A DNA stretch of 64,000 nt from Anthoceros angustus (taxonomy: Eukaryota; Plantae; Anthocerotophyta), in assembly GCA_010909165.1 (NCBI GenBank), contig MU008168.1, positions 682,001 to 746,000 of the forward strand, given 5' to 3'. This document shows, piece by piece, positions 12,272-60,650 of the stretch (the first letter of the stretch is position 1; each line of letters begins with the position of its first letter). The notes beneath the pieces are model-generated. The model made no database searches. It was given only the letters and a program-made list of their open reading frames with translations, and was not told where the DNA came from. Position numbers and translations under genes: made by a program.

Positions 12272-12575
12272 CTAATGTCTGGCGCAATGGGGTCACCCGA
12301 CGTCAGATGCAGGGCATGAAGGACGCTAATAGCCTCCTCTAAAGTTGGCGCCACTGGCTCCGATCGGAGAGCCCGAGCAGCTCGATCATACTTCTCAGCA
12401 CGACCAAGCAAAAGACATCGCTTAAGACGCCCCTTCCCAGGGTCCGGACAAACACCATCCACCTTAACGGAGTCTAACCGAGACCTCGCTGCACGCCCAC
12501 ACTCTTCTTGTAGAGCCTCCCAATCTCCGGCCGGAAGCAGGCGGAGGCGGAGGTGATCTCGATGACTTGAAAACT

Positions 12576-17700: not shown

Positions 17701-17781
17701 AGAAAGGGGGAGATCACCCCATTCTTGCGAGAGTGGTAAGCTTGTCGCCCCATTCTTACGATAGTGGTAAGCCTTGGCCAC

Positions 17782-18882: not shown

Positions 18883-21800
18883 TTACAACCAAGTGGCTCT
18901 AGTGGCCACATCCCATCGGTGGACCACCTGCCAATTCTCATCTTCCCGCGAACTCGCCTCGTTACCACGATCGCCGAGCAGATTTGACGGCAAACTCACA
19001 TACTCGCTTCCTGTGCTCAAGGTAGTCCCTTCCTGACCGTTAGCACTCTCTGGCGTCTGCGAGTTCTCAGCTGGACCTCCACGAGGGCTGCTGCTCATTA
19101 ACTCCGTGCCAACAGCTCCCTCGGTACGTCCCGCCATGTTTGTGTGTGTTTTCTCGTGATCTAGCCAGTTGTGCAGCTCATTACCTGATTCTGCTGCTGT
19201 TGCTGTCGACCAACGGACACTGCTCGCAGACGTCTGAACTAGAGGAGTTTCAGCTGGCTCCTCAGAAGCATGCTCCACACCAGTCATCTGCACACCATGA
19301 TTGGTAGATGACTTGCTTGAAGTGGAGAGCCTGCCTCCTTGAGTGGACCTTACCGACATGCTCGCTTGCGTTACGTACCCACTACTAGCCGAGAGCGTTA
19401 AATCCTCCACCTGACGTTTCACAACTTCCACATCCTCACAAAGGATGGCCACTTCCCCTCTGGCAAGGCAAGACAATCCACGCACGTTGAGCAACTACAT
19501 AGAGTATTCCTACAGGCTACAATTTCCCAGTGAATGAAGCATGCCAGAAAGACTTACTGAAGGGAATCAACCACGCTCCCACTCTCGATAAGAAATTCAC
19601 GAAGCTGCAGGGCCACCAAGCACAGGGCTCATCAAGATGCTGTCCATTTTGTTCAATACTAAAGAAAAAAGGTAATCACCAACAGAAAGCACCAACCTTC
19701 CTACATTCTTCCGCTTCTCTCTCAAGTTGCTCGGACTCCAGCTGTACGTTCTCCAGCATTTCCACTTCCAAAGCAAGAGCCTTCTTAGCCGCACTCTCGT
19801 TCGCTAGCTTGAGCCCATCCGCAGCTTCTTTCTCCTCCGCTGCCTTGTCCAGAAGGCCATGCAACATAGCCTTGATCTGGCCCAAAAAACAGCGGAATAC
19901 ACATTACAGGCACCACACAAGACGTTCAATCAAGTAACATCTGCAGGCCAACCAAGATGGTAAAGCTAAGGTATCTTGAAAACCATTTTCTTGTGGAAAA
20001 AAGGTCACCTGACGGATGTTGTGAGCAGCGTTCGTCTTTTCTTCAGTGACCTGAAGAAGGCGTGCCTGAAGCTCACGTGCCTCTGTTGCGAGCACTGCTT
20101 TCTCTCCGAAGACTTCTCCGTGATGCTATCACAATAAGGGTTAGAGATTAAGAACTGCTGCTATGAGCAAAAACGCGCAGGGAGTCAGGAGTCTACAACA
20201 TCACCTCTGAAAGGAAACCATGCCAAGATACTTGATTGTGAAGTAAATAACTCACAATCTCATTTGCTTGAAGAGCAATTGCCGTTTGATCTCTAACCTC
20301 CTTTGCCTTGGCAAGCATCTCCGCCCCTGCATTCGCAGCATCAACCTTGGCCTGTCTTGCAGCTGCTTCTGCCCTCTCAACTTCATGCCGCAAAGCACAA
20401 ATCTCTGCAAGGGCCCCAATCAAATCATCCTGCACGCAGAAAAGAGCACCAGCATCAATTAGAACTCTACGGGATGAATGCTCTCTAAAGCAAACCATCC
20501 AACCACAGAGTGCTAATGTAAGTAGCCATTACCAGCCCGTGCACACAGGCAAGTAGCGAATTACCTTATCATTTCTTGCTTGCTGCACCTTCTGATCCAG
20601 AACTTCAATTGTTGGTGCTTGAGAGGCCGAGCACTGCATGCTTCCCCACATTGCAGGTTCTGATGGCAAAGTACCTTGAATGTCAGAGTAGACAGAGCTG
20701 TAGTTTTCATCCCTAGTAAGCTGTGAGCCAACAAAGTCATCGGACTCAGAGGAGTCACCCTTGATGTCAATGTTCCCAGAATCGTGTCTCCCAGCATCCT
20801 CAAATGAGGAACTGTCAAGTCTGGCAGACTCGTCATCGTTTTCACGATGAACTTCTAGATCACTGAACGAATCATCTTCAGAGTATGCCTCCTCATCATC
20901 ACTCTGCCCTGGGGAAGAATAACAGGCCTCCTCATCATCACTCTGCTCTGGGGAAGAATAACAGGCCTCCTCAACATCACTCTGCTCTGGGAAAGAATGA
21001 CAGGCCTCCTCAACATCACTCTGCCCTGGCCCCTACGCAGGAAGGAGGAGAGGTTTCTTCCCAGTATTTCATGTGACAAAACGTTACCAGTGTTCTTCGT
21101 GGAATTTTCATAGGCACCTGCTATTACCAGGTTCTTTTCAAGGTGACTGACGTTCTCCGCAGACAATTCAAGACGTCTCATGTTCTCCACGGTCTCCACA
21201 GACAAGTCATTGGCTGTACAGCGAGGTTCAATACGATCTGACCAAGAAGAGCAGGAACCTTCTAAGTTGCCCCAAGTATTGGAAACATAGGTAGTCAGGA
21301 TAGCTTCAGGTGTCGGCTTTTCCTGCGTTACTTGCTCAATGATCGGCTGGTCAAGACGGTGACCAACGCCCTGCTGCACATCAGCCAAAAACCGGGTAGG
21401 TCACTAACCAATACAAGGTTATTGTAGGATTATCAAACGGATGCCGTCCTTAGTCTGTTCACCTTCTACAAAAAAGAACATGGCCCAACTTCTCCCAGGG
21501 CACTAAAGTGGCAGTGTGAAAGGGTTTGTAACAACGAGAAGCAGAAACGCACTTGAGTTGGATAACTTCCTGTTTGCTCGACGGCAATCCCACGGCTCAC
21601 TTCTGTAAGAGATGATAAGGGCGTGGGCCCATTTCGCTCTGGCAGCACTTCATTGAGAATGGATTCAACACAGGCAGCCATATCGGACCCATGCTCAAGT
21701 ATGGTCGCGTTGATTATACGGTAATCCACCTGCCCCGGCCACAGAAGAGCTCAACAACCTCCGTGCTAAGCTCAACATTCCAACCCACAGGACCTCCTAT

Positions 21801-38389: not shown

Positions 38390-39702
38390 ATGGAGGCAAG
38401 CAAGCCGGAGATGGAAGCTTTGTGTCAAGCTCTGCAACGCCTCCTCACGCAGCTTCGGATCAAGATTCGGGCTTCAGCTCGGCAGCGCTTAGCTTTTGGT
38501 GTGTGCTTTGGAGCTCTCATCTGTGTTTTTTTGTTTGTGAAGGAAGGGTTTGGAATTGATCTGATGTGTCTTGTCGCTGGGAAGCTAGATATGGTGGTGC
38601 TCTGCTCGGGGCTGAGGCCTGCGGTCATGGTGGACTATGCTGGGCCGGTTCTGCGGTTGGTGGAGCAGCTACCTGAGCTGCTCTCTCTTCTTTCGTTGGT
38701 GAGCATCAGTGCTTCGACATCGGGCCTTGTGGTTTGAAGATGGCTACAATTGTGATCGAACCTAGGGCACAGGAATGCAGAGTCGTGACGGGCTTGCGGC
38801 TGCTGCACTTTGTGGACTGTGTATACCTCATCCACGTTGCTAACCTTTGGAGGTACTTGGAGTACACGTCAAAGCCTGGCAGTCTGCCGGACTTTGTGAT
38901 TCTGACCAAAAATTCGGCCAGGGTAAGAGTGGTTGCAGTTGGAATAGTCTTTTGTGCGTGATGTATTGGAAATGTATTTACACCGTGCAGGATTGCACGC
39001 AGGTGGCTTCAGCTGCCGAGAGAGCAGACATTTTGTTGACCTGTCAAGGCCTGAAAGCTGAGATTTTCAGATCTGTGCTCTTCTCAACCGAGACTACCAA
39101 GGTGTCAGATCTACCCTGCACTGAAGCATCTAAGTGCGAAGATGATGGAAGGGCCAACAGCCCTGGTGAAGTGCTTATTGACCTTCACGACAAGGAGTTC
39201 GACGTCCTGTTGCCCACGGCCAATGGGTGGCTTCTGGCGTATCCCATTGTTTACACCTTCAGCAAGGAGGAAGCATCCGAGGCTGGACGTCGCCTGGCGA
39301 TGACGGATTTATATCTGTATCGTGTATCACTCGTGAGGTGGGTCCATACTACCCCTATTTAATTTCTTTCCTGCCAAAAGTTTCCAGCTCGTGTTGATCG
39401 ACAGATTTGTGCATTCAGCTGTGTGCCTGCACTGACTCCATCAAGTGGGGATCTTCTTCGGTATAGCTCTGATCCTTCCGGTTTCCCTTTTGGCGGTGCT
39501 GATGAGTGTATTCGCTACCCAGAGTGCTAACCAGTATCGCATTGGCAGCTTCAGCGTACCCAGGAGTCTCAGCCCTCTGGCCGAGAATGAATCATGGGTT
39601 TCCAGGTTTTTGGAGTTTAGCCTAGGTTCACCACATCCTGAGATTTGGAGGAATTTGCAAGTAGATGTGGTACTACCTCCCACTCAAGGGGTGGTCTTAT
39701 GA
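38390..39702 (+). CDS. UPF0739/DUF4504 (C1orf74-like) family protein, multi-exon
   Basis: DMVVLCSGLRPAVMVDY, VLIDL..LPTANGWLLAYPIVY, FSVPRSLS. Confidence 0.65.
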
Positions 39703-43489: not shown

Positions 43490-43663
43490 AGATATAAAGC
43501 TAGTGGGGCTACCTCTAGACTCCTATTTCATTGCGTTCTTTCGGCAGCGGGTGTCCATTACCCTCATAAGGACATTTGCATCAATTGCTATCTTACGGAC
43601 AATAGCGAGTGCTGGAGATGCATCCTCAACTAGTTCAATAATATGGAAGTCATTAAATCTCCC
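43490..43663 (+). mobile_element. 3'-terminal fragment of a CRE-like element (host of the Gypsy array; resumes at 60512)
   Basis: YFIAFFRQRVSITL..ASIAILRTIASAG resembles the RQRVSxxLQRxQAxAI end motif of REL-type non-LTR elements. Confidence 0.55.
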
Positions 43664-44999
43664 TGACGTGAAACTGATGCTAGGAACTAACTCTTAGAAG
43701 CTAGGGCTTAGCAAGTAGGTTTTGTTAGCTTAGTTTAATCAGTTGGTACTGATAATTACTAAAATGCCCTTGAACAGGAAAGTCGGAAATAACCCGCAAA
43801 ATGGCCAAGCTTGGGCCAGTCTCCCTCTCACACGGTGGGAGAAAGCGAACATGATCACTCCAATCCAAGAGATGCCGCACCAAGAGTGTGGTGCTCATCT
43901 ATCTTGACGACGCAAGGTGGTTGCAAGGCGGTTGCGGAGCACAAGACCAAGGCGGCGGTGGAAGGCGATTGTCGAAGTCCCTAGGAGGAACGCTAGAACA
44001 CACGCAATTTTGTTGTTGTAATTTCTAGGTCAGAATGCAAAGACCTGTATGCGCTGCTCAAAGATTGTGGCAATGTGTGTAATGTGCGTGTTCATGGGAC
44101 TTATCAGCTCTAGGCAGCCCGTGTAGGGCAGCCCTTTAATTTTCTCGAATCGAAGTGAGCATCGGCACATGTGAGCCCGGTGCATGTCTACAACCGCTTC
44201 GAGAAGCATTCAACTTGATTCTGCCTTGGCCTGGAGCATGAGGAGTCTGCACTTACGGCTCAGCTTGACCCGCCACTATGGGCTTGACGTGGTGCATTTT
44301 GCTAGGGTTTCGTGCATGGTCGATTGCCGCAGGACTTGTTGGGTTTTACGGCTCAAGGGTGCTGGGCGGGATTTTCCAGGCCAGCTGTGTGCCCCGGCCG
44401 CACAACTCAAGGCCCTCTCATAATTTTTGAGTCCTCCCATGTCTCAACCGCAAGTTTCCACGGCCGTCCGTAGAGCTCATAGCGATCGCCACACGAGTCG
44501 GCTGCTTTCAATTTGCATACCATCTTGTTTGCCTCGTTGAGACGAATCCGTTGGTATCATTTTTGTCTACTTTCGAGTGAGAAACAGTGGACTGAATGCC
44601 TGGGAGAAGTTGATCACTAAGGTTTTAGTTGGGGAATTTGGCTATGTGCAGCCAACACTTCTCTTCTGGGTAGGTGCTGGGTCTTGTACAGACGAGCACG
44701 AGGAGTGAGTCGCTGAACAGGCTGAGGATTCTCGTGTGAGTGAGGCATCATCGAAAAGCTTGAGGTCAGGGAGGATCGAGTTGCGGCATTGGCGTGTTCG
44801 GTGTTTGTGTTTCACACCGATTCCGCTAAGGTTTTCCCTCTGCGGTGACAATTGATGCTGGCTTCCTTGACTCACGCGTCGATTACATGGGGCATGCCAC
44901 CGGTGAAGAGGGAGATAGCCCACTACCGCTTATGAACGAGGGACGCGCCTGTGGTTTCGTGAGAAGGAGAAGGGCACCACGTCACAAGATTTGTCCTTA

Positions 45000-47900
45000 G
45001 AGGACCTACAGTAATGTGAGCCCGGACAAGGATCCTTTGCACCACGTTAGGGTTAGCTGGTCCCCACTTACACCTTGTGCGGTGACTGATAAGGAGGAGC
45101 AGGGGCCAGCAGGGGTGGGAGTGCACCGGAGGGCTGGGATTAGGCCTTTCCTCGTGGCTCGCTCCCGTGCATTTATCACGAAGACCAGGCAAGAGGACCG
45201 TCTGGTGATTCGACACGATGGAAGGAGGGCCAAATGGCGGTGAGAAATTCTCGGCAGAGAACACAATCGTTGAGGGATTTTAGGCTGCGAGTCAATGAGG
45301 CAATTAGTAGGGTCAAGTTCAAACATGTGATAACCACCTCTACATGTTCGAACAGCTATCGATACATGGTCGATGAGGCCTGGATTTGTATGAAGCCCAC
45401 CAAGCGGAGTGACCTCAACCACGGCCGTCCAATCCATTATTCCAAGGGCACTGCAGATGGCCTACAATGCCAAGTGGCGGGCCGGTGACCCACCAGCAGC
45501 CATATCTGCAGTATCGCCGCCATTTGCCGCCACCCACCGTGATGCCTCTCACGGCTCTGAGAGGACAATACCACGCAGGGATTGATGAATTCATACACAC
45601 CCCAAATATGCCAACCTGTGGAAGAGTTCATGAAGATCCTCGAGAAGGCTTTTCCACTCAAGACTCCAGAAGATTGGAGCAAGCTTGCACGCCGGAAAGG
45701 GAGACCCAGATGTGTTTCCGTGAGGCTGCAAAAGCTGCGAGATGGGACCTGCATGCTCACGGACCAAGAAGCTGGAGAAATTCCTCACCTTGAGGGTGAT
45801 CACCGTTTCATTTCCAGTTGTCCTCACTTGTGGATAAGTATGGCGATGCCTATACTTTGCAGCAGTACATGAGGAAGCGGAGAAGAAAGAGATTGCTTAC
45901 TCCGTCTTCTCCTCCAAGCATTCCAAGGCCTTCCACCATTATCAAGGCATGTTTTCAAGCAAGTCTGCGCCTCGGGGAACTTCTTCAAGGACTACACCTA
46001 AGCCACCCAATGAGCAACAGCAGAAGTGATCGAGCTATGCCACCATGTGCAACCATTGTGGCGATCCGAGCACATCTCACCGAATTGCAAGTGCCCAAGG
46101 CCTCTTTGCACTCATTGTCAAAAGAATGGTCATGTGAGCACCGTGTGCTTTCAACTTCACCCGAGAGGAGATACCAAGTCGGCATCACCGGAGATGCTAC
46201 TAGCATCAAGACAGAGCAACTCCGCACTGGGGACTCTAAGAGCAAGCAATGAGGAGAAAGCGAAGCAAAGAACGCGACAAGATGACGCCGAGGCCACGGG
46301 TCGCCTTGGCAGCAGTGGGCACGCTTACAACCAGCCTCGAAAGCTGGTGGAGCTAAGCTCAGCGGTCGCAGAGCCGGTTCTGGCGAAATGGAGAAGATTA
46401 TGGACACCCACATGAGGTGTTGATGAGCTGGTTGCCTCGAGCTAAGGGAAGATGTGCCACCTACATGGGTTGGGCATGCCATTAATCTTGCCCCTGACAT
46501 CGTGTTAGCAAATGCAGGCCCATCACTGGCGAGGAGCAAGGGCAATGCCTCAATCCTTTATGCCTCACACTGAACCGCCATCCCATTACGCGGTGATACA
46601 TCTTCACTCCGGGTGACACAGAGCCAATGCAGAGAGATGAGGCAGCCCTCGCTTTAGGGCAATTGTACATGATGCCCCTTTGGTCACACATGAGCAGCTG
46701 GCAGCACGGTTGTTGCAAGCACCATTAATGTCCTTGCAGGACATGGGCATGACCAGGGAACGTCTCCAGCAACTGGTGCAGACACAGGAAGTCACAGCCG
46801 TTGCTCATGTGCCGGGAGATTTGGTAGTCAGGTCTGGGGGGGGACTTGTTCCTTTCCCCGGATCACCGTTAGTAAATTCAGGCTGGGAGCCTGGTGGACA
46901 GCTTCCATTGCAAATGACCTGCATGACTGAATTTCCAACAGGGCTGCTGGAGCATCCACGCATCCAGCCTACCAACAGGCTGCGAATGCGAGTGAGTAAC
47001 GCAGTGGTAGACAACCGAGAGGGACGGGTCATCACAACGGCACCTGTGGTGGTGTTGCTGGACATCGGCGCCAGCCTCATTATAAACAGTCGGCAAGACG
47101 GCTTGGTTTGCGGTGAGAAGCACTCAAATCCCCATGGAACATCCGCACTGTGGAGCCCGTGTGTGGCGAGACTTGAACTGTGCACATCACATTGAATCCA
47201 GCTCATCGGATGCCATGACCATGTCTCTGCCGTGCTTGGTGACCACGGCCACAAACTACGACCGCTAGGGCGAGTTTCTTTTCCCACCGCGAGGGAGTGG
47301 ATAATTGACTGAGCAGCCTTCATACCGACCGGCGAGGAGGACGGCAGCACATATTCCCTTGACTTGCACGGCAGGCCACGAGATCGCCACGTTAGTGGTG
47401 TGCCATGCTAGCAAGGAGCCCGTCTGCAATGTGAAGCTAGTCCAAGATGCTAACCGAGCGGATGCACAATCTTGAAGTCGATGACGCCATTCCGCCCCAT
47501 GGATCTCACGGCTTGCAACATGCCCTTGCACAACTCGATCATCCAGCAGTGCTCACGCTAGTAAAGAGATGTAAGAGACAGAGGCAGTGATGCACTTGTT
47601 GGATTCAGTGTTAACCAGCCCACTCAAGATCGAGGCCGGATCACAATGTGATTACATGGGCGCCATCGTCTGACGACGGTGGTAGAACTCTTTTGGGGAT
47701 CTGCATCGGGCCGGAGGCTCTCTTGATGATCGATCGTCATACACACGTATGACAATGATGTCACAAAGACGCCGCGTCGCAGTTCGTGCAAGGGCATGAG
47801 CGTTTTCCACAGCGCCTTGGAGGCCTATCACGGTGCTTTCCGCTCTACCGCAGGATGTCCGTTACATTCAAGAAGGCCACATTCGCCTTGGGAAATGTGG

Positions 47901-50900
47901 ATATGGTGATTGCCGGTTGGGAATGCTGTGGGTTCTCCCAAGCCGGGCATGGAGCTGGTCTACAAGATGCTGTGGCTGTTCGTGGATCTACATCAGTCCT
48001 CACATGGGCTCAAGAATACAACCCGCGTGTGCTTACCTCCTTGAGAATACACCGCGCACATTGACAGAGCACATGTGCAACAGGACATGGGCGTGGTTCA
48101 AGATTATGCCGGGCCTCCCATCCTGTTAGATGCGCCTGGTGGGCGCGCTTTGCTCACCGAGGAATTATGGACCAACTTGGTCCCCGCCCCGCTTGCAGAC
48201 TGCGCGTGGCACACAGGACCCGTCCTTGCAGCTTCAACTGTGCCGGAGGATCATCACCAGCCAGCTTGTTACCGCCATGAGCGCGCCTTGGTTCAAAACC
48301 AACACACTGCCTCGGCAGACCGCCCACGCCGTTAGCTTTCCGTTCATTCGCTTACGGTGAGGGGAGGGCCCCGCATTGAACACCAACACGCAGCGGTGGG
48401 AGGAACCCACCGGCCGGAGGAACGCATTATGGGCTTTCACCCCATTCTGCCAGCCCTACTTACACCAACAAGAAGCGTGCTCTAGGCGAGCCATGGATGT
48501 TCACGCACTCACGTGGTTAGTGAGTCTGTGCTTGGCTTTTCACCTCCACGCTGTGCCATGGTACTGTGCCCATCGCCAAGATGTGTCCATGACGCAGTTC
48601 ATCTCCCTTTTCACGGATATGCATACATGCCTTCGGCCGGATGCGGGGTGGAGCAGTCCGGTGGCGCCCTGTGTGCTTTTTCCGCCTCCAGCCACCAGAG
48701 AGCGCTTAGATGATCCAGTCCCGCAAAGCCTAAGCTAAATGCCGAGACTTTCCGTGGCGCATGGGGATGGGACGGATGGGCGTAAGACACGCATCCACAC
48801 TCTCTGCTCAAGTATCGATCGCTTTTTACCATGAAGGACCTCAAGCGCGCAATGTGATCAGACGGATCAACGACGGTGAGCCCATCTACCGCCACAAAGT
48901 TGAGCAAGGCGGAGTGGGAGATGGTCGATGCTAGGTGTCGTGAGCTTCTTGAAGGTGGCTTATCCGGCTATCCAAAGTATTATGTCAAAAGAATCGTCAT
49001 GCCGCTTAAAGAAGGATGCCAAGGGTCGTGGACGGAGAACGGATGTGTGGGGACTATCGTCCCATCAATGCCACCGCGCAGGATCGGTACCCAATGCCGA
49101 AGGGAGGAGATATTTGACATTGGGCGCCTCTTCTTCTCTACTTTGGACCTTGACGGGGTTTTAACCATTGCGTAAGAGGACATCAAGAAGACCGCGCTTC
49201 ACGGGTCCCAACAGTGTGGAATGGCTGGTGATGCCATTCGGTTCAAGAACGCACCCGTCACTTTTCGCGGGTGATGGATCCGTTTTACCGGATGTGCCAA
49301 CTTGTTGTGCTATATCGACGACGTGGTTCACAAGATCGCTTTGAGGATCACCGGCACACTTAGAGGAGCTGTTCCGTAGGCTAAGGAAGGCGAGCTCACA
49401 TGTCACCCGTCAAATGTGAATTTGGAATGAACACGGTGGCATATTTAGGTCAGAATCGTGCCTAACGGGTGATGCCCCACTCAAGGTACAGCTATCCCGC
49501 AGTGAAGGAGCCCACCAACGTGTCGCCTTGCGTGCCTTTCTTGGGTTATGCAACTATTAGGTTTACATTAATTTCAGCCATAAACCCTTGAATGACATGT
49601 TGAGGAAAGACGTGGAATGGGCATGGATGAGTTGGCGCAGCAAGCTTTTGACATGTTGAAGGAGCAATTGACCAGGTCACCGTCATGGCTAGGCCGATTT
49701 TAGCAAGCCATTTGTGTTACACACCGATTGAGCCGCTCGGGACTTGGGGGTGCTTGCACAAGAGGATGAGCAGGCAAGGAGCGTGATCGCTTATGCCTCG
49801 AGGAGTAATAACCGAGCGGAGGCCAGCAGCTATGAGGGGAGTGCCTCGCTCGTTTTGCTACTTCCGCCCATATTTGTATGGTCAGCTTGTTAGTGATCGA
49901 TCACCATTGAAATGGCGATGACTAACACAAATTGGGAAGTCGTCGGGCCATGATACTTCAAGATTATGACTTCCTTGTGGAGCACAGAGTGACACACCAA
50001 AATGCGACATGCTATCTAGAAATCCGGACGGTGCAGTGATGTCACCGAGGCTAGGCGGACCATGAGGAGGAGATTGGTGCGATGTCATGCTGGCGCATTT
50101 TGTTGCCATGACCGCCTTGGATGATTGTGTTTTGCTCACCTAATGCAAAGGACATTTGGGAAGATGTGAATGCTCTTCAAGATTGGTGCACTAAGTATGG
50201 ACGAGGCTGACCCACTGAAAGAAGCAGGTGGTCAATAAAGACTATGGCGTGATGGCTACATGATTCGCAAGTCGGGCAATGGTGTCGAGCGCTTGGTGCC
50301 ACCACCGTGATAGGGTCGACACGTCGTGCACGACGACATGGTCACTTTGGTGAAGCGGACTTACACTCACACCTCATTTTTATTGGTATGGGATGCACAA
50401 CCAAAAGTAGAATGTGGCTCTGTGAGCCTTGTGACCGAGTCAAGGCCTCCTTTACTATGCAGCACCCGGTTCTCCACCCTCTGCCCATCATGGGCTTGTT
50501 CTTTCGCTGATCCTGCGACCTCATTGGAGAATTGACTAGGACGCCGAGAGGCAATGTCTACATACTTGTCATGATGGAGCATTTCTCCAAATGGGTGGAG
50601 GTTGTGGCTCTATCAGATAAGTCCTCAAGCACGCCCTGCATTTTTGCACACGTGCTTAGCCGGCCGGTGCCGAGTGCACCGACTGTGGCTGAGTTTAGAG
50701 GGAATTTCGTGACCTTTTAGATGTTGCGCTTATCGATCACAAAAGCGGACTAGGGACCATCCTCGTGCTGATGGTGAAAGGATGGTCCCACCATCAATGA
50801 GAAAGTTATGCTTGCGCTGGAAAGGAGGATTGGGACCTCATGCCGCCTACATCGCTATGGGCTACCGCATGAGTAAACATGCACCTTGGCACACTTCTCC

Positions 50901-51516
50901 CTTACTTGCTTTTGGTCGTGAGCCCGCGAGTACAATAGCTAAGAAGATGCAGGAGGTGGCAGCCTTGATGATCCCGCCACACATGGGCTCGAGTGATTGG
51001 GGAGCGGCAGTATTTCGGCAGTGTTATGCCAATGGCTATGGCCAACCTCAACATAGCTCAAGACCGGATTCCTTACGGTATGCGCATACCCGCAGTGGGT
51101 CATTCAGGCCCAAGCTGAAGAAATTCCAGATTGGGGATTTCGTATACTTGCAAAGGCAAACTGTGGACACCTTGGACGCTGCTAGCAGCAGACATGTGCT
51201 GAGGGTGCGAGAAGTTAGGCCCAATGGAGTGCTGATTTTGCAGGGCTCAGATGGTAGGACTATTGCAGACCATACCAAGAACTGTGCGCCCTGCCACTTA
51301 CCTAATTTGGACCCCACAGTGATAACAACAGCCTGGATTCCACCGGCAGACTACCCGTGCCAGGTTTGTGGGAGGACAGATGATGAGGAGCTTATGCTTC
51401 TCTGTGACGGATGCAATGGGGGTTTTCATTTGTTTTGCCTTACCCCTCCGCTGCAGGCTGTTCCTGAGCAACTCTGGTATTGTGCAAAGTGTGCTGGAAA
51501 TGCTGTTCAGGGATGA
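45000..51516 (+). CDS. gag-pol polyprotein, frameshifted in this assembly: gag, 2x CCHC, PR, C5-MTase, RT, RNase H, IN, PHD
   Basis: CTHCQKNGHVSTVC (~46105); VLLDIGA (~47055); MTase motifs 47680-48530; CGDYRP, FSTLDL, VMPFG.KNAP, YIDD (49040-49325); GHFG..RT...CEPC, CDLIGELTRTPRGNVYILVMMEHFSKWVE (50330-50610); PHD 51358-51492. The start is approximate. Confidence 0.85.
47680..48530 (+). CDS. C5 DNA cytosine methyltransferase domain within pol (copy 1)
   Basis: Motif I VELF.GIC.G (~47682); motif III LPQDVRYI (~47845); motif IV VDMVIAGWECCGFSQAG (47896-47945); motif VI AYLLENT (~48031-48051); motif VIII AHR.RNYWTNL (~48150); motif IX EEPT..ERIMGF (~48400); motif X LG.AMDVHALTWL (~48483). Order is canonical. 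Confidence 0.85.
51358..51492 (+). CDS. PHD finger at the integrase C-terminus
   Basis: CQVCGRTDDEELMLLCDGCNGGFHLFCLTPPLQAVPEQLWYCAKC (C4-H-C3), in frame with integrase in ORF 50782-51516. Confidence 0.95.
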
Positions 51517-53199
51517 CTGTTTGGATTTTACAGTCCATGTGATGTTGGCTGGGTGTGATGGAATTGTGTGGACCTTTTTGTTTGCTAGACGCACCCAGGC
51601 TTTCCATTGTGAATGCGGCTGCTGCAGGAGTTCTAGGATTCTTGCTGGCCTCATTCTTGGTTCCATGTGGCATTTGTTTCAGCACGTTGCAGATGCCTTG
51701 TTTCTTTCTTTTTCATTGTTTCGCCCGTCCATCACCGGGGTAGCATAGGTAGAATTTTAGCACTTTTCTTTTGTTTGGCCTCGACAGAGGCCCTCTTTTC
51801 CCTTGCACAAGGCCGGTGAAAACCAGAAGAAGTGTGAGCAAGCTGTTGGTTTACCGACAAATGATGAAGACGCACGATACCGACGTGAAACTGACTAGGA
51901 ACTAACTCTTAGAAGCTAGGGCTTAGCAAGTAGGTTTTGTTAGCTTAGTTTAATCAGTTGGTATGATAATTACTAAAATGCCCTTAAACAGAAAGTCGGA
52001 AATAACCCGCAAAATGGCCAAGCTTGGGCCAGTCTCCCTCTCACACGCGTGGGAGAAAGCGCATGATCACTCCAATCCAAGAGGATGCCGGCACCAAGAG
52101 TGGTGCTCATCGTATCACGACGCAAGGTGGTTGCAAGGCGGTTGGAGCACAAGACCAAGGCGGCGTGGAAGGCGCTTGTCAAGTCCCTAGGAGGAACGCT
52201 AGTGAACACACGCAATTTTGTTGTTGTCGAATTTCTAGGTCAGAATGCAAAGACTTGTGTGTATGCGCTGCCGCATTGTGGCAATGTGTGTAATGTGCGT
52301 GTTCATGGGACTTATCATAGGCGTGTAGGGCAGCCCTTTAATTTTCTCGAATCAAGTGAGCATCAAGACATGTGAGCGCCGCATGTCTATTTCACAACCG
52401 CCCGAGAAGCATTCAACTTGATTCTGCCTTGGCCTGGAGCATGGAGGAGTCTGCACTTACGGCTCAGCTTGACCCCAGCCTATGGGCTTGACGTGGTGCA
52501 TTTTGCTAGGGTTTCGTGCATGGTCGATTGCCGCAGGACTTGTTGGGTTTTACGGCTCAAGGGGTGCGGGTGGGATTTTCCAGGCCAGTGCCCGCTGGCC
52601 GCACAACTCAAGGCCCTCTCATAATTTTTGAGTCCTCCCATGTCTCAACCGCAGCAAGTTTCCACGGCCGTCCAGAGCTCATAGCGATCGCCACACGAGT
52701 CGGTTGCTTTCAATTTGCATACCATCTTGTTTGCCTCTGAGACGAATCCGTTGGTATCATTTTTGTCTACTTTCGAGTGAGAAACAGGGACTGAATGCCT
52801 GGGAGAAGTTGATCACTAAGGGTTTTAGTTGGGGAATTTGGCTATGTGCAGCCAACACTTCTCTTGCTGCGGGTAGGTGCTGGGTCTTGTAAAGCACGAG
52901 CACGAGGGAGTCGCTGAACAGGCTGAGGATTCTCGCGGTGAGGCATCGGCAAAAGCTTGAGGAGGATCCGAGTTGCGCAAGATTGGCGCGGTGTTTGTGT
53001 TTCACCGATTCTCGCAGCTAAGGTTTTCCTCCGCAGACAATTGATGCTGGCTTCCTTGACTCATCGGCCGATTACATGGGGCATGCCACCGGTGAAGAGG
53101 GAGATAGCCCACTGCATCGCTTGACCAGGGACGTGCCGCCCAGGTTTTCGTGAGAAGGAGAAGGGCACCACGGCACAGATTTGTCCTTAGAGGACCTAC

Positions 53200-56100
53200 A
53201 GTACAGAGAGCCGGACAAGGATCCTTTGCACTGTTAGGGTTAGCGGTCCCCACTTACACCTTGTGCAGTGACTGATAAGGAGGAGCAGGGGCCAGTGGGG
53301 TGGGAGTGCACCGGAGGGTCGGGATTAGGCCTTTCCTCGGGCTCGCATTTATCATGTAAGACCCAAGAGGACCGTCTGGTGATTCGACACGATGGAAGGA
53401 GGGCCAAATGGCTGAAATTCTCGGCAGCCAGAACACAATCGTTGAGGGATTTTAGGCTGAGTCAATGAGGCAATTAGTAGGGTCAAGTTCAAACATGGGC
53501 GCGATAACCACCTCTACATGTTCGAACAACTATCGATACATGGTCGATGAGGCCTGGATTTGTATCACCAAGCGTGACCTCAACTACGGCCGCCTCCAAT
53601 CCATTATTCCAAGGGCACCGCAGATGGCTCTGCCAAGCTGGGGCGTGGCGACCCCACCGAGCCATATCCGCAGCATCGCCGCCATTTGCCGCCCACCGTG
53701 ACCTCCTCACGGCCACAGAGAGGACAACACCACGAGGGATTGATGAATTCATACACACCCCCAAATATGCCAACCTGGAAGAGTTCATGAAGATCCTCGA
53801 GAAGGCTTTTCCACTCAAGACTCCCGAGAAGATTGCCGGCAAGCTTTGCACGCCGGAAAGGGAGACAGGATGTTTCCGTAGGCTGCAAAAGCTGCGAGAT
53901 GGGACCTGCATGCTCTGCACCAAGAAGCGGAGAAATTCCTCACACCCTTGAGGGTGATCACCGTTTCATTTCCACCGTTGTCCTCACTTGTGGATAAGTA
54001 TGGCCTATACTTTTTGCAGGTACATGAGGAAGCGGAGAAGAAAGAGATTGCTTACTGCCTTCTCCTCCAAGCATTCCAAGGCCTTCCACCATTATCAAGG
54101 CATGTTTTCAAGCAAGCCGCCTCGGGGAACTTCTTCAAGGACTACACCTAAGCCACCAAGGAGCAAGCAGTGATCGCACCGCTACAATCACCATGTGCAA
54201 CCATTGTGGCCCCGAGCACCGACTGCAAGTGCACCGGCCTCTTTGCACTCATTGTCAAAAGAATGGTCATGTGAGCACCGTGTGCTTTCAACTTCACCCC
54301 GAGAGGAGATAGAAGTCGGCATCACCGGAGATGCTACTAGCATCAAGACAGGAGCAACTCGCACTGGGGACTCTAAGAGCAAGCAATGAGGAGAAAGCGA
54401 AGCCAAGGTTGAAACGCGACAAGATGACGCCGCCGGAGGCCACGGTGGCCGCCTTGGTGTGGCACGCCGCCACAACCAGCTGGTGGAGCTAAGCCCGCAT
54501 GGGTCAGGTTCTGATGAAACAATGGAGAAGATTATGGACACCCACATGAGGTGTTGATGTAGCTCTGCCTCGTGACAAGCTAAGGGAAGATGTGCCGCCT
54601 ACATGGGTTGGGCATGCCATTAATCTTGGCGGGACATCGTGTTAGCAAATGCAGGCCCATCACTGCAGGGAGCAAGGGCAGCAATGCCTCAATCCTTTAT
54701 GCCCCTTACACTGAACCGCCATCCCATTAGGGGATACATCTTCACTCCGGTGAAGACAGAGCCAATGCAGAGAGATGAGGCAGCCTTTAGGGCAATTGTA
54801 CATGATGCCCCTTTGGTCACACATGAGCAGGCAAAGACGGTTGTTGCAGCACCATTAATGTCCTTGCAGGACATGGGCATGACCAGGAACGCTCCAAAGA
54901 ATCACGGAACGTGGAAGTCGTTGCTCATGTGCCGAGATTTGGTAGTCGTCCGGGGACTTGTTCCTTTCCGGATCACCGTTAGTAAGCCGGGAGCCCGTGG
55001 ATGCTTCCATTGCAAATGACCGCATGATCGAATTTCCAATGGTGCGGAGCATCCACGCATCCAAAATTACCAACAGCCGCGAATGCGAGTGAGTAACGCA
55101 GGGTAGACAACCGAGAGGGACGGGTCATCACAACTACTGCACCTGTGGTGTGGATACGGGCGCACGGCCATTATAGGCAGTCAAGACGGCTTGGTTTGCG
55201 TGGAGAAGCACTTGAAATCCCCATGGAACATCCGCACCTGGGGCTGGAGCCTGTGTGGCGAGACTCGTGCACATCACATTGAATCCAGCTCATCGGATGC
55301 CATGACCATGTCTCTGCGTGCTTGGTGACCACGGCCACAAACTACGACCGCTAGATGAGTTTCTTTTCCCACCGGGCGAGGAGTGGATAATTGACGAGCA
55401 GCCTTCTATCGGCTGACCGGCAGCAGGAGGAGCCTAGCACATATTCCCTTGACTTGCAGGTGGCCACAGATCACACGTTAGTGGCCATGCTAGCAAGGAG
55501 CCCGTCCTGCTGGAAGCTAGTCCAAGATGCTAACCAGCAAGATGCACAATCTTGAAGCGATGACGCCATTCCCATCCATGGATCTCACAGCTTGCAACAT
55601 GCCCTTGCACAACCCGATCATCCAGAAAGTGCTCACGCTACTGAAAGATGTAAGAGATGAAAAGCAGTGATGCACTGTTGGATTCAGTGTTAACCACCCA
55701 CTCAAGATCGAAAGGCCGGATCACAATGTGATTACATGGGCGCCATCGTTCGGACACGACGGTAGAACTCTTTGGCGGGATCTGCATCGGGCCGAGGCTC
55801 TCTTGATGATCGATCGTCATGCCGATACGTGTGTGTGATGTCACAAAGACGCCAGTGTGAGTTCAGCCGCGGGCGCATGAGCGTTTTCCACAAAGAATCG
55901 CCTTGGAGGCCTATCATGCTTTCACCGCCTACCGCAGGATGTCCACATTCAAGAAGGCCACATTGCCTTGGGAAATGTGGATATGGTGATTGCCGGCCGG
56001 AATGCTGTGGGTTCTCCTGCCGGGCATGGAGTGGTCTACAAGATGCACGCTGTGGTCATTTCTACATCAGTCCTCACATGGGCTCAATACAACCCGCTGT

Positions 56101-59100
56101 GCTTACCTCCTTGAGAATACACCGGCGCAATTGACACAGAGCACATGTGCAACAGACATGGATTATGCCGGGCCTCCCATCCCGTTAGATGCGGCCTGTG
56201 GGCGCTTTGCTCACCGAGGAATTATCGACCAACTTGGTCCTCGCGCCGGCTTGCGTGGCACACACGGACCCGCCCTTGCAGCTTCAATCAGGCCGGAGGA
56301 TCATCACCAGCCAGGCTTGTTACCGCCTGAGCGTGCGCCTTGGTTCAAAACCAACACAGCGACCTCGGCGAGACTACGCCTGTTAGTTAGCTTTCGAGTT
56401 CATTCGCCTAGGGGACAGGTGCTGTTGAACACCAACACGCAGGAGGAACCCACGGGCCGGAGGAACGCATTATGGGCTTTCACCCCCAGCCTCTACTACA
56501 TACACAACAGAAGCGGTTTCTAGGCGAGAGCCATGGATGTTCACGCACTCACGTGGTTAGTGAGTTTTTCACCCACGCCCGCTGGCAGCCATGGTACCAG
56601 CCCATCCAGATGTGTCCAATGACGCAGCTTCATCTCCCTTTTCCGGATATGCATACATGCCTTCGGCCGGATGGGGGTGGAGCAGTCCGGTGGCGCCCCT
56701 GTGCTTTTTCGCCTCCACCACCAGAGAGCGCTTAGATGATCCAGTCCCGCAAAGCCTAAGCTAAATGCCGAGACTTTCCTGGCGCATGGGGATGGACAGA
56801 TGGGCGTAAGACACGCATCCACACTCTCGCTCAAGTATCGGGGCTTTGCCTTTACCATGAAGGACCTCCGCAATGTGATCAGATTGGATCAACTCGACCA
56901 GAAGTGAGCCCATCTACCGGCGCCGCTACAGTTGAGCAAGACGGAGGGGAGATGGTCGATGCTAGGTGTCGTGAGCTTCTTGAAGGTGGCTTATCCGGCT
57001 ATCCAAAGAATATTATGCGCGCAAAGAATCGTCATGCCAAGAAGGATGCCAAGGGTGGACGGAGAACGGATGTGGGGACTATCGTCCCATCAATGCCGTC
57101 ACAGCAGGATCGGTACCCAATGCCGACCGGAGGAGATATTTGTGACATTGGGCTCTGTCTTCTTCTCTACTTTGGACCTTCGATGGTTTTAACCAGATTC
57201 CGCGTAAGAGGACATCAAGAAGACCGCGTTCACGGGTCCCAACATGGAATGGCTGGTGATGCCATTCGGTTCAAGAACGCACCCGCACTTTTCGGATGGA
57301 TCCGGTTTTAGGATGTGCCAACTTGTTGTGCTATATCGACCGGGTTCACAAGACGCCTTTGAGGATCACCGGCACACTTAGAGGAGCTGTTCCGTAGGCT
57401 AAGGAAGGCAGAGCTCACATGTCACCCGTCCAAATGTGAATTTGGAATGAACGGTGGCATATTTAGGTCACGTAATCGTGCCTAACGGGTGATGCCCACT
57501 CACCAAGGTACAGCTATCCCAGTGAAGGAGCCCACCAACGCGTCGCCCGTGCCTTTCTTGGGTTATGCAACTATTATAGGTTTACATTAATTTCAGCCAA
57601 TTGTAAACCCTTGAATGACATGTTGAGGAAAGACGTGGAATGGGCATGGATGAGTTGGCGCAGCAAGCTTTTGACATGTTGAAGGAGCAATTGACCAGGT
57701 CATGGCATGGCTAGGCGATTTTAGCAAGCCATTTGTGTTACACACCGATTGAGTCTGCGGGACTTGGGCGGTGCTTGCACAAGAGGATGAGCAGGCAAGG
57801 AGCGCGTGATCGCTTATGCCTCGAGGAGTAATAACCGAGCGGAGGCCACCATGCAGCCTATGAGGGGAGTGCCTCGCTGTTTGGGCCGTTGCCACTTCCG
57901 CCCATATTTGTATGGTGGTCAGCTGTTAGTGATCGATCATCGCCCATTGAAATGGCTGATGACTAACACAAAATTGAGTGGGTCGGCTCACGGGCCATGA
58001 TACTTCAAGATTATGACTTCCTTGTGGAGCACAGCCGAGTGACACACCAAAATGACATGCTATCTAGAAATCCGGACAGACCGCAGTGATGTCACCGAGG
58101 CAAAGGACCATGAGGAGGAGATTGGTGCGATGTCATGTCGCCTTCTTGTTGCCATGACCGCCTTGGATGATTGTTTGTCGCTCAAATTTAATGCAAAGGA
58201 CATTTGGGAAGATGTGAATGCTCTTGATTTGCGGACAGTATGGGCGAGGCCTGGACCCGGTGGAAAGAACAGCAGTGCAGCGTCAAAAAAGACTGGCGTG
58301 ATGGCTACATGATTCGCAAGTCGGGCAATGGTGTCGAGCGCTTGGTGCCACCACCGTGATAGGGGTCGACTGACACGCCGGGTGCACGACATGGTCACTT
58401 TGGTGTGAAGCGGACTTACCGCTCACACCTCATTTTTATTGGTATGGGATGCACAACCAAAGTGCGAATGTGGGCTCCGTGAGCCTTGTGACCGAGTCAA
58501 GGCCTCCTTTACTATGCAAAGACCTTCTCCACCCTCGCCCATCATGGGCTTGTTCTTTCAGTCCTGCGACCTCATTGGAGAATTGACTAGGACGCCGAGA
58601 GGCAATGTCTACATACTTGTCATGATGGAGCATTTCTCCAAATGGGTGGAGGTTGTGGCTCTATCGATAAGTCCTCAAGCACGCCCTGCATTTTTGCACA
58701 CGTGCTTAGCGGTAGCTGTGCCGAGTGCCCCGACCCACTGTGGCTCGAGTTTAGAGGGAATTTCGTGACCTTTTAGATGTTGCGCTTATCGATCACAGGC
58801 GGACTAGCGGGACCATCCTCGGTGATGGCTGGGAAAGGATGGTCCGACCATCAAAAAGTGAGAAAGTTATGCTTGCGTGGAAAGGAGGATTGGGACCTCA
58901 TGCGCCCTACATCGCTATGGGCTACCGCATGAGTAAACATGCACCTTGGCACACTTCTCCTTACTTGCTTTTGGTCGTGAGCCGGTCGAGTACAATAGCT
59001 AAGAAGATGCAGGAGGAGGTTGATGATCCCGCCACATGGGCTCGAGTGATTGGGGAGCGGGGCATGCTATTTCGGAGTTATGCCAATGGCTATGGCCAAC

Positions 59101-59520
59101 CTCAACATAGCTCAAGACCGGATTCCTTACGGTATGACACCACATGGTCATTCAGCCCAAGTCAAGAAATTCCAGATTGGGGATTTCGATACTTGCAAAG
59201 GCAAACTGGACACCTTGACATGCCAGCGCAGACATGTCGAGGGTGCGAAGTTAGGCCCAATGGAGTGCTGATTTTGCGGGGCTCGGATGGTAGGACTATT
59301 GCACCATACCAAGAACCGTGCCCGCCACTTACCTAATTTGGACCCCATGATAACAACAGCTGGATTCCACCGCACTACCCGCGTTTGTGGGAGGATGATG
59401 AGGAGCTTATGCTTCTCGTGGATGCAATGGGGTTTTCATTTGTTTTGCCTTACCCCTCCGCCGCAGTCGCTCGAGCAACTCGTATTGTGCAAAGTGTGCT
59501 GGAAATGCTGTGGATGACTG
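53200..59520 (+). CDS. Second gag-pol copy (frameshifted), with C5-MTase at ~55760-56560 and PHD remnant at ~59375-59510
   Basis: Colinear with copy 1: VELFGGICIG at 55762, DMVIAG..EC.GFS ~55980, AYLLENT ~56101, AMDVHALTWL ~56530. Confidence 0.85.
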
Positions 59521-60511
59521 TTTGGATTTTACCATGTGATGTTTACGGTGTGATGGAATTGTGTGGACCTTTTGTTTTGCTAGACGCACCAGCTTTCCAT
59601 TGTGAATGCGGCTGCAGGAGTTCTAGGATTCTTGCTGGCCTCATTCTTGGTTCCATGTGGCATTTGTTTCAAAGACGCTGATGCCTTGTTTCTTTCTTTT
59701 TCCGATTGTTTCCGCCCGTCCATCACCGGGGTAGCATAGGTAGAATTTTAGCACTTTTCTTTTGTTTGGCCTCGACAGCCCTCTTTTCCCTTGCAGTGAA
59801 GGCGGGTGAAAACCAGAAGAAGTGTGAGCAAGTCGGGTTTTCATACCGACAAATGATGAAGACGCACCGACGTGAAACGATGCTAGGAACTAACTCTTAG
59901 AAGCTAGGGCTTAGCAAGTAGGTTTTGTTAGCTTAGTTTAATCTTGGTACCGATAATTACTAAAATGCCCTTAAACAGAAAGTCGGAAATAACCCAAAAT
60001 GGCCAAGCTTGGGCGGTCTCCCTCTCACACGTGGGAGAAAGCATATGATCACTCCAATCCAAGAGGATGCCGGCACCAAGAGTGTGGTGCCCACTGCATC
60101 ACGACGCAAGGTGGTTGCAAGGCGGTTATGAGCACAAGACCAAGGCGGCGGTGGAAGGCGATTGTCGAAGTCCCTAGGAGGAACGCTAGTGAACACACGC
60201 AATTTTGTTGTTGTCAATTTCTAGGTCAGAATGCAAAGACTGTGTGTGTATGTCGCCAAGATTGTGGCAATGTGTGTAATGTGCGTGTTCGCGGGACTTA
60301 TCACTCTAGGCACGTGTAGGGCAGCCCTTTAATTTTCTCGGGAGTGAGCATCGACATGTGAGCATGTCTGGGGTAGAATTTTAGCACTTTTCTTTTGTTT
60401 GGCCGGACAGAGTCTTTTCCCTTGCAGCTGAAGGCCGGGTGAAAACCAGGAAGAAGTGTGAGCAAGCTGCTGGTTTTGCGCTGCGCTGACAGCTGATGAA
60501 GACGCACGACA

Positions 60512-60650
60512 TCCCTAGTTAGTAGATGCGTTCACCCATCTCCTCTTTCTTAGAGTGCTGGAGATGCATCCTCAACTAGTTCAATAATATGGAAGTCATT
60601 AAATCTCCCTAGTTAGTAGATGCGTTCACCCATCTCCTCTTTCTTAAATA
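60512..60650. repeat. ~97-bp tandem duplication of the target region, containing an uninterrupted empty site
   Basis: 60553-60648 reads gagtgctggagatgcatcc...cattaaatcTCCCTagttagtagatgcg..., i.e. left flank (43607-43664) joined to right flank (60512-60552). Confidence 0.9.

What the first reader, a model, noticed from the sequence alone, without database searches (positions are those of the whole stretch)
47680..48530. Gypsy-like retrotransposon carrying a C5 DNA cytosine methyltransferase between protease and RT
Seen: the ~1.8 kb gap between protease and RT holds C5-MTase motifs I, III, IV, VI, VIII, IX and X in canonical order, in both copies. Known: Gypsy pol normally has no such domain. 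From memory, cytosine-MTase capture by retrotransposons is reported in dinoflagellates and charophyte algae; I know of no characterised land-plant case. The DIRS 'MT' domain is an adenine methylase and differs. Inference: the enzyme would be packaged with pol and could methylate nascent cDNA before integration, as self-marking, host-mimicry or evasion.
Basis: partly seen in the sequence, partly recalled or inferred. Interest (0 to 1): 0.95.

Follow-up and report, generated by a model that had tools for sequence, protein, structure and literature searches.

The report
Gypsy retrotransposon carrying DNMT3-like methyltransferase
The stretch really is a DNMT3-type cytosine DNA methyltransferase domain built into the pol gene of a Gypsy-type retrotransposon. 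This extends a kind described so far only in the alga Klebsormidium to bryophyte land plants, but both copies here read as broken in a very noisy assembly.

Summary
Both copies (47642-48658 and 55692-56562) carry C5-methyltransferase motifs I, IV, VI, VIII, IX and X in canonical order. I did not check motif III.

- **Statistical support:** frameshift-aware alignment to a natural relative scores 382 and 214, against 41±5 for shuffles.
- **Integral, not inserted:** elements in Sphagnum, Calypogeia fissa and metagenomes have the domain at the same place. There it shares one reading frame with protease and with RT.
- **Type:** a profile of the family and a predicted fold both match DNMT3A/B/C first.
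- **Element:** protease-DNMT-RT-RNaseH-integrase-PHD, with split direct repeats (A-I-B-A-I-B-A-B), TG..CA ends and a 4-5 bp target duplication.
- **Closest known:** KnitGypsy-Dnmt3 of Klebsormidium nitens (de Mendoza 2018). I found no paper on a land-plant case.
- **Wider clade:** related green-algal elements place the same DNMT between RNase H and integrase.
- **Caveat:** frames break about every 50-60 bp. Indels rival substitutions in every repeat of the window and cluster at CG/CWG, so much of the damage may be assembly error.
- **Function:** methylation of the element's own cDNA remains the published, untested hypothesis.

First readers of this scan flagged the same family on many other pieces of this genome.

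The parts
43660..43664 (.). Left target-site duplication, TCCCT (or TCCC if the element starts with TG)
   Evidence: the same letters stand at 60512-60516. An uninterrupted 'empty site' version lies at about 60596-60616.
43665..44176 (+). Terminal repeat A1
   Evidence: 90.6% identical to A3 and aligned with A2.
46956..47149 (+). Aspartic protease, copy 1 (LLDIGAS motif)
   Evidence: frameshift-aware alignment to the L001 protease ORF scores 81, against a null of 44±5 (maximum 61).
47642..48658 (+). DNMT3-like C5 cytosine methyltransferase domain, copy 1 (motifs I-X; 18-19 frameshifts, 0-2 stops as assembled)
48804..49429 (+). Reverse transcriptase, copy 1
49511..50180 (+). RNase H, copy 1
50340..51067 (+). 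DDE integrase (H2C2 zinc finger and core), copy 1
   Evidence: colinear with the Integrase_H2C2/rve parts of P0059 and P0133.
51115..51495 (+). Integrase C-terminal extension with PHD finger (finger about 51358-51492), copy 1; part of the only long intact ORF, 50713-51513
   Evidence: PF00628, E 1e-12; 65% identical to the L001 PHD ORF.
51748..51877 (+). Repeat B1
51882..52377 (+). Repeat A2
55692..56562 (+). DNMT3-like domain, copy 2 (11-15 frameshifts, 0-1 stop as assembled)
56818..57449 (+). Reverse transcriptase, copy 2
57548..58225 (+). RNase H, copy 2
58858..59500 (+). Integrase C-terminal part and PHD region, copy 2
59739..59867 (+). Repeat B2
59869..60363 (+). Repeat A3
60372..60511 (+). 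Repeat B3, the right end of the element (ends ...CA)
60512..60516 (.). Right target-site duplication, TCCCT

Best explanation
**Shown.** Window 43665-60511 is one insertion of a Ty3/Gypsy-type retroelement.
- Its pol reads protease - DNMT3-like C5 methyltransferase - RT - RNase H - DDE integrase - PHD finger.
- It has split direct repeats instead of plain LTRs. Here they form a head-to-tail dimer, A-I-B-A-I-B-A-B, with TG..CA ends and a 4-5 bp target duplication.
- The flagged stretch is the methyltransferase domain of the first unit. The second unit has it at 55692-56562.
- The domain is an integral, inherited part of pol in a lineage that includes elements of mosses (Sphagnum) and liverworts (Calypogeia).
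- It is homologous to the DNMT of a larger green-algal Gypsy-PHD clade, where the domain lies between RNase H and integrase.
- Across that whole clade several catalytic features are invariant: the motif IV cysteine, the Glu-Asn of motif VI and the His-Arg of motif VIII (the second Arg of RxR is near-invariant). The proline normally preceding the cysteine is usually Glu.

**Inferred.** In intact family members the domain is made as part of Gag-Pol. It travels with RT and integrase. It methylates the element's own double-stranded cDNA, or DNA at the integration site, de novo. The PHD finger tethers integrase to a histone-tail state.

**State of this locus.** As assembled, both units are frame-broken about every 50-60 bp. 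Much of that is probably long-read error at methylated cytosines, so whether the units are alive or dead cannot be read from this sequence.
For: - **Homology:** (scores 382/214 and 183/135 against 41±5; six motifs in order in both copies; direct PF00145 hit on motif IV).
- **Same position in relatives:**
  - L001 reads PR-DNMT-RT-RH-PHD.
  - P0181 has PR and DNMT in one ORF; the P0175 ORF, which carries the DNMT, runs on into RT N-terminal sequence (sequence read).
  - L005 has a 533-aa DNMT ORF followed by a 1033-aa RT-RH-INT-PHD ORF.
  - Calypogeia fissa GCA_965154635.1 reads PR-DNMT-RT-RH-INT-PHD.
- **DNMT3 type:**
  - family profile against PDB gives DNMT3A 7e-19, DNMT3B 1e-15, DRM 4e-10, M.HhaI 3e-7.
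  - a model with pLDDT 86 has DNMT3A/B/C as all 50 listed matches, TM by target about 0.8.
- **Conserved catalytic residues:**
- **Clade membership:** (window copies group with Sphagnum-like and Calypogeia sequences, SH-aLRT 98).
- **Element structure and TSD:**
- **Gypsy order and integrase:**
- **Assembly noise:**
  - gap-open/mismatch ratio is 0.25 to 3.7, and 0.6 or more in all pairs but the most diverged one.
  - the same ratio is about 0-0.3 (mostly under 0.1) in the Calypogeia assembly.
  - indels lie near CG in 37% of cases against 20% background, and near CWG in 33% against 15%.
  - independent contigs differ from the window by more gaps than substitutions.
Against: - No window piece reaches Pfam's gathering score on its own (14.3 bits against 22).
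- As assembled, no DNMT reading frame longer than about 30-60 residues survives.
- About a third of the frameshifts lie at the same place in both units. These could be real lesions inherited from a dead ancestor.
- No RNA run holds the stretch.
- The one assay of the closest known domain (KnitGypsy-Dnmt3 in yeast) showed no methylation, which its authors called inconclusive.
- The Pro-to-Glu change before the catalytic Cys might impair catalysis.
- I obtained no Klebsormidium sequence, so relatedness to KnitGypsy-Dnmt3 rests on shared architecture only.
Confidence: 0.85

Rival explanations
1. The DNMT-like domain is real but no longer methylates DNA. It is kept in pol for another role, such as nucleic-acid binding, m5C on RNA, or a structural spacer.
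For: - In most members motif IV reads GWECQ, not the usual Pro-Cys.
- KnitGypsy-Dnmt3 gave no methylation in yeast.
- De Mendoza et al. note that motif X is poorly conserved in the K. nitens copies.
Against: - The catalytic Cys, the Glu-Asn of motif VI, the His-Arg of motif VIII (second Arg near-invariant) and motif I are conserved across sequences only 31-36% identical. That pattern is expected of an active enzyme.
- One member keeps the canonical Pro-Cys.
- The predicted fold superposes on DNMT3A over the whole domain.
Confidence: 0.25
2. The two units are true dead relics. The frame breaks are real mutations, and the dimer arose by duplication of an already defective element.
For: - 16 of 43 pol frameshifts and 5 of 18 DNMT frameshifts coincide within 3 nt between units, above chance.
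- Several stop codons are present.
- Substitution divergence between the units is about 5-7%.
Against: - Indels are about as frequent as substitutions in nearly every repeat pair of the window (ratio 0.6-3.7 in all pairs but the most diverged one, 0.25). One pair has 3 mismatches and 11 gaps. This does not look like natural decay.
- The indels cluster at CG/CWG.
- Shared positions could be systematic basecalling errors in the same sequence context.
- Another follow-up in this scan reports the same error pattern elsewhere in the genome.
Confidence: 0.4
3. The segment is a secondary insertion, or a host DNMT3 fragment captured only by this copy.
For: None beyond the unusual position in pol.
Against: - It lies at the same position and in frame with its neighbours in Sphagnum-like, Calypogeia and metagenomic relatives.
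- No repeats or target duplication bracket the segment.
- Both units carry it.
Confidence: 0.02
4. This is a DIRS-type tyrosine-recombinase element whose 'MT' domain is the usual adenine methylase, or the motifs are a chance resemblance.
For: Split direct repeats of the A-I-B-A-B kind are typical of DIRS/PAT elements (figure legends quoted).
Against: - The element has a DDE integrase with an H2C2 finger and a target-site duplication with TG..CA ends.
- The matches are to PF00145 and DNMT3, not to an adenine methylase.
- Alignment scores lie far outside the shuffle range.
Confidence: 0.02

Closest known systems
KnitGypsy-Dnmt3 of Klebsormidium nitens (de Mendoza et al. 2018, Nat Commun 9:1341, PMC5890265)
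   Same: - A Gypsy-type pol with an unrearranged Dnmt3-like domain inside the polyprotein.
- Repeats arranged as in DIRS (A-coding-B-A-B) while the domains are Gypsy-like.
- A streptophyte host.
- The same proposed role: methylating retrotranscribed DNA.
   Different: - The host here groups with bryophytes, not a charophyte alga. The 2018 survey included no hornwort, liverwort or Sphagnum.
- A PHD finger follows integrase. The paper's text never mentions one.
- The domain order of the K. nitens element is given only in a figure I could not read, and I obtained no K. nitens sequence. Common descent is therefore untested.
- This locus is a two-unit dimer.
Green-algal Gypsy-DNMT-PHD polyproteins found here (Haematococcus lacustris KAJ9527864.1, Monoraphidium neglectum MNEG_11595, many metagenomic contigs)
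   Same: - Homologous DNMT domain (local HMM E 1e-80 to 1e-118).
- Homologous integrase-PHD part (37-45% identical).
   Different: The DNMT lies between RNase H and integrase, not between protease and RT. I found no publication describing them.
SymbioDIRS-Dnmt3 of Symbiodinium (same 2018 paper)
   Same: - Dnmt3-type domain in Pol.
- A-I-B-A-B repeats.
- For these, de novo CG methylation was shown in yeast.
   Different: They are DIRS elements with a tyrosine recombinase, in dinoflagellates, and their RT is unrelated.
Host DNMT3 (animals, Physcomitrium DNMT3) and plant DRM
   Same: The catalytic fold and motif order are those of DNMT3. The best sequence and fold matches are DNMT3A/B/C.
   Different: - No PWWP or ADD domains.
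- Embedded in a retrotransposon polyprotein.
- Glu instead of Pro before the catalytic Cys.
- Not circularly permuted as DRM is.
Chromoviruses (Gypsy elements with a chromodomain after integrase) and EpiLTRs (bioRxiv 10.64898/2026.05.21.726589)
   Same: A chromatin-reader module is fused to the integrase C-terminus, and the retroelement carries epigenetic writer domains.
   Different:
- The EpiLTR DNMT is sister to DNMT4, sits at the 3' end of pol and accompanies an adenine methylase.

Membership tests
C5 DNA methyltransferase (PF00145) | Conserved motifs I, IV, VI, VIII, IX and X in canonical order | tested here: met
   all six located in order in both copies.
C5 DNA methyltransferase (PF00145) | Catalytic Cys in motif IV (normally Pro-Cys) and Glu of motif VI (ENV) | tested here: met
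   GWECCGFS / GRECCGFS and LLENTP. The Cys and Glu are present. The preceding Pro is Glu, as in most of the family.
C5 DNA methyltransferase (PF00145) | Pfam score above the gathering threshold | tested here: inconclusive
   The best window piece scores 14.3 bits against a cut-off of 22, because the frame is fragmented. Relatives 45-49% identical to the window score 32-37 bits.
DNMT3 subfamily | Catalytic domain closest to DNMT3 and not permuted as in DRM | tested here: met
   (on natural relatives and the family profile); motif order.
DNMT3 subfamily | Host-gene architecture (PWWP/ADD N-terminal readers, multi-exon gene) | tested here: not met
   The domain lies inside pol between protease and RT. 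It is DNMT3-like, not a host DNMT3 orthologue.
Ty3/Gypsy LTR retrotransposon | pol order PR-RT-RH-INT with DDE integrase (H2C2 + rve) | tested here: met
Ty3/Gypsy LTR retrotransposon | Short target-site duplication and TG..CA ends | tested here: met
   TCCC(T) on both sides, with an empty-site copy nearby.
Ty3/Gypsy LTR retrotransposon | Two identical long terminal repeats flanking the internal region | tested here: not met
   the repeats are split, A-I-B-A-I-B-A-B.
KnitGypsy-Dnmt3 | Gypsy domains plus Dnmt3 in Pol plus DIRS-like A-I-B-A-B repeats | tested here: met
   Here there is one extra A-I-B unit.
KnitGypsy-Dnmt3 | Sequence relatedness to the K. nitens copies | not tested
   No K. nitens protein appeared or 50 (length and word filters apply), and the paper's supplements held no sequences.
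DIRS retrotransposon | Tyrosine recombinase, no target duplication | tested here: not met
   DDE integrase and a TSD.

The most novel reading that the evidence does not exclude
Gypsy-DNMT3-PHD elements are not a one-off capture in Klebsormidium. They form an old clade spread across green algae and bryophytes. Within it the methyltransferase has moved inside pol (PR-DNMT-RT against RH-DNMT-INT). Some land-plant members are still active and write 5mC on their own cDNA or at PHD-chosen integration sites.
Probability: 0.35. Interest if true: 0.7.

Novelty: new member of a known kind. Interest (0 to 1): 0.5.

Why it matters
Cytosine methylation is the host's main weapon against transposons, so a transposon that carries its own de novo methyltransferase is a paradox. 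It has been described only in dinoflagellates and one charophyte alga.

This work adds three things:
- The same kind of element sits in named land plants (Sphagnum, Calypogeia) and in this bryophyte-like genome.
- It always carries a PHD reader.
- It has relatives in chlorophytes with the domain at another place in pol.

Together these suggest an old and widespread association, and not an isolated capture in one lineage. They also offer experimentally tractable bryophyte hosts in which to test what the enzyme does.

This locus adds little beyond membership, because its sequence is too noisy to judge integrity.

Tried and rejected
- **Pfam on stop-free pieces:** pieces of both copies gave one weak hit. 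Pieces covering other parts of the element, the gag-side region included, gave only the PHD finger.
- **Plain tblastn:** the L001 DNMT ORF found nothing in the window at E 0.01, because of the frame breaks. I therefore wrote a frameshift-aware aligner.
- **Sequencing runs:** The look-up of sequencing runs gave one coded DNA run with 6% of the words and no RNA run.
- **Reads on the locus:** Read laying put contigs only on RT and integrase stretches and none on the DNMT. The locus could not be checked base by base, and nothing can be said about expression.
- **Organism:** Rfam found nothing in the window. The look-up of the 'src' protein P0388 found nothing. The Atlas search of the DUF4504 ORF gave no useful taxa. 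I did not identify the organism. 'Probable hornwort' comes only from other follow-ups of this scan.
- **Klebsormidium sequences:** none surfaced in three homology searches and the representative search, so there is no tree with KnitGypsy-Dnmt3 or host DNMT3/DRM.
- **Readings considered and rejected:** chance motifs, a secondary insertion, and a DIRS adenine-methylase element (see the rival explanations).
- **Not done:** I built no consensus of the two copies.
Full report
**Structure of the locus**

A self-comparison of the window shows that 43665-52377 aligns with 51882-60363 at 86.6%. A roughly 500-bp block occurs three times. A finer search adds a 130-bp block, also present three times.

- A1 is 43665-44176, B1 is 51748-51877 and A2 is 51882-52377.
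- B2 is 59739-59867, A3 is 59869-60363 and B3 is 60372-60511.
- The layout is therefore A-I-B-A-I-B-A-B: split direct repeats with two internal units.
- The outer ends read TG...CA. They are flanked by TCCC(T) on both sides.
- An uninterrupted copy of the target lies about 90 bp further right.
- So the whole block is one integrase-type insertion, or an insertion later duplicated internally.

**The methyltransferase observation**

Translating stop-free pieces gave one weak PF00145 hit on motif IV in copy 1 (E 0.028) and none in copy 2. The frame changes about every 50 bp, which explains the weak result.

I looked for intact relatives through the only long ORF, 50713-51513 (integrase C-terminus plus a PHD finger).
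- The representative search found hundreds of related Gypsy polyproteins.
- One short hit led to metagenomic contig L001. Its gene order is protease, a 400-aa PF00145 ORF, RT, RNase H and PHD.

A frameshift-aware protein-to-DNA alignment that I wrote gave these scores:

| Query | Copy 1 | Copy 2 |
|---|---|---|
| L001 DNMT ORF | 183 | 135 |
| P0177, a better-preserved relative | 382 (143/315 identical) | 214 (112/230 identical) |

The null was measured with the L001 query. It was 41±5 (maximum 70) in 250 DNA and protein shuffles. The opposite strand and the reversed protein gave 39-45.

Protease lies upstream and RT downstream.

**Is the domain integral to the element?**

Yes. The evidence comes from natural relatives.
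- P0181 holds protease and DNMT in one ORF.
- The P0175 ORF, which carries the DNMT, runs on into RT N-terminal sequence.
- L005 has a 533-aa DNMT ORF directly followed by a 1033-aa RT-RH-INT-PHD ORF.
- The Calypogeia fissa assembly GCA_965154635.1 has PR-DNMT-RT-RH-INT-PHD at L006:7164-15397.
- Named hits also include Sphagnum magellanicum and S. troendelagicum.
- On a DNMT tree the two window copies were read through with X at each break. They group with the Sphagnum-like and Calypogeia sequences (SH-aLRT 98).

**What type of methyltransferase?**

- A 14-sequence family alignment used as a profile hits DNMT3A at 7e-19, DNMT3B at 1e-15, plant DRM at 4e-10 and M.HhaI at 3e-7. DNMT1 does not appear at E 0.01.
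- An AlphaFold model of the Sphagnum-like domain (pLDDT 86, pTM 0.88) has DNMT3A/B/C as all 50 listed matches, with TM about 0.8 by target.
- The motif order is not permuted, unlike DRM.
- Several catalytic features are invariant across sequences only 31-36% identical: the catalytic Cys, the Glu-Asn of motif VI and the His-Arg of motif VIII (the second Arg of RxR is near-invariant). The residue before the Cys is usually Glu, not Pro.

**A wider clade**

A local HMM shows that most of the long integrase-PHD polyproteins carry this same DNMT (E 1e-80 to 1e-118). These include sequences from Haematococcus lacustris; a Monoraphidium neglectum polyprotein surfaced in the later DNMT-region search.

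In the members checked, the domain lies between RNase H and integrase. So the domain has changed place within pol during the history of this clade. An unrooted tree cannot say which order is older.

**Comparison with what is known**

De Mendoza et al. 2018 describe KnitGypsy-Dnmt3 in Klebsormidium nitens.
- It has a Dnmt3 in the Pol of a Gypsy element whose repeats are arranged as in DIRS. That is the same combination seen here.
- Their survey included no hornwort, liverwort or Sphagnum.
- Their yeast assay of the K. nitens domain was negative but inconclusive.
- They proposed methylation of retrotranscribed cDNA.

A 2025 paper and a 2026 preprint from the same field still list only 'streptophytes (Gypsy-DNMT3)'. 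Searches for a bryophyte or hornwort report found none in the library.

I could not obtain a K. nitens sequence, so common descent with KnitGypsy-Dnmt3 is untested.

**State of the copies**

As assembled, the DNMT has 18-19 frameshifts in copy 1 and 11-15 in copy 2. The RT-to-PHD part has 43 in each.

I do not read this as plain decay, for four reasons.
- In the window's repeat pairs the gap-open/mismatch ratio is 0.25 to 3.7, and 0.6 or more in all pairs but the most diverged one. One pair has 3 mismatches and 11 gaps. In the Calypogeia assembly the same ratio is about 0 to 0.3, mostly under 0.1.
- Between the two units, 292 gap events accompany 555 substitutions. The transition/transversion ratio is only 1.2.
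- Indels lie near CG in 37% of cases against a 20% background, and near CWG in 33% against 15%.
- Independent contigs of run X1 differ from the window by more gaps than substitutions.

This fits long-read basecalling error at methylated cytosines, as another follow-up of this scan reported for this genome.

Against that, about a third of the frameshifts coincide between the two units. They may be inherited lesions or systematic errors. The integrity of the locus is therefore undecided.

**Organism**

I did not identify it. The element's closest relatives are bryophyte sequences. Other follow-ups of this scan call the genome a probable hornwort (unchecked by me). First readers flagged the same family on many other pieces of this genome.

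**Verdict**

This is a real, integral DNMT3-like domain in a Gypsy-type element. It is a new land-plant member of a kind known from Klebsormidium. Two wider observations are worth following up: the clade-wide PHD finger and the change in the domain's position within pol. The enzymatic role remains a hypothesis.

Noticed in passing
whole window; e.g. 15983-17702 vs 19682-21417, 5329-8917 vs 8700-12273, 43665-52377 vs 51882-60363: Nearly every repeat pair differs by about as many gap openings as mismatches (ratio 0.25-3.7; 0.6 or more in all but one pair). Indels are enriched at CG and CWG. This looks like long-read error at methylated cytosines, so frameshifts in repeats of this assembly should not be read as decay.
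   Followed up: partly
window 43607-43664, 60512-60646: The host sequence on both sides of the insertion is repeated at 100% identity (58 bp and 41 bp). The right flank therefore holds an intact 'empty site' copy next to the filled site. This is either a real 94-bp duplication or a filled and an empty allele joined by the assembler.
   Followed up: partly
proteins P0016, P0133, P0059, P0488 and others: A large, apparently undescribed clade of green-algal Gypsy polyproteins (Haematococcus, Monoraphidium, many metagenomes) reads RT-RNaseH-DNMT3-like-integrase-PHD. The homologous DNMT is at a different place in pol than in the bryophyte elements.
   Followed up: partly
window 51358-51492 and 59161-59500: A PHD finger follows integrase in both units and throughout the clade. 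It sits where chromoviruses carry a chromodomain. Its histone specificity was not examined.
   Followed up: no
window 36-336 (minus strand): A fragment 72% identical to the gag-side region 45602-45881 of the element, in reverse orientation. It also matches an upstream ORF of L001 (98-286). It is probably the edge of another family member.
   Followed up: no
window 764-4744 and 5329-12273: Tandem repeats of about 0.8 kb units, and a 3.4-kb tandem duplication holding a Copia-type gag ORF (DUF4219, 6493-7053).
   Followed up: no
window 38847-39362 (+): An ORF with a DUF4504 match (E 2e-11). It was the only non-transposon Pfam match among the ORFs of 170 aa or more that I scanned.
   Followed up: no
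L006 (Calypogeia fissa) 4388-6419 minus strand and 10195-12350: The liverwort element has a second, inverted partial copy beside it. A 99.6%-identical repeat is nested inside its RT.
   Followed up: no
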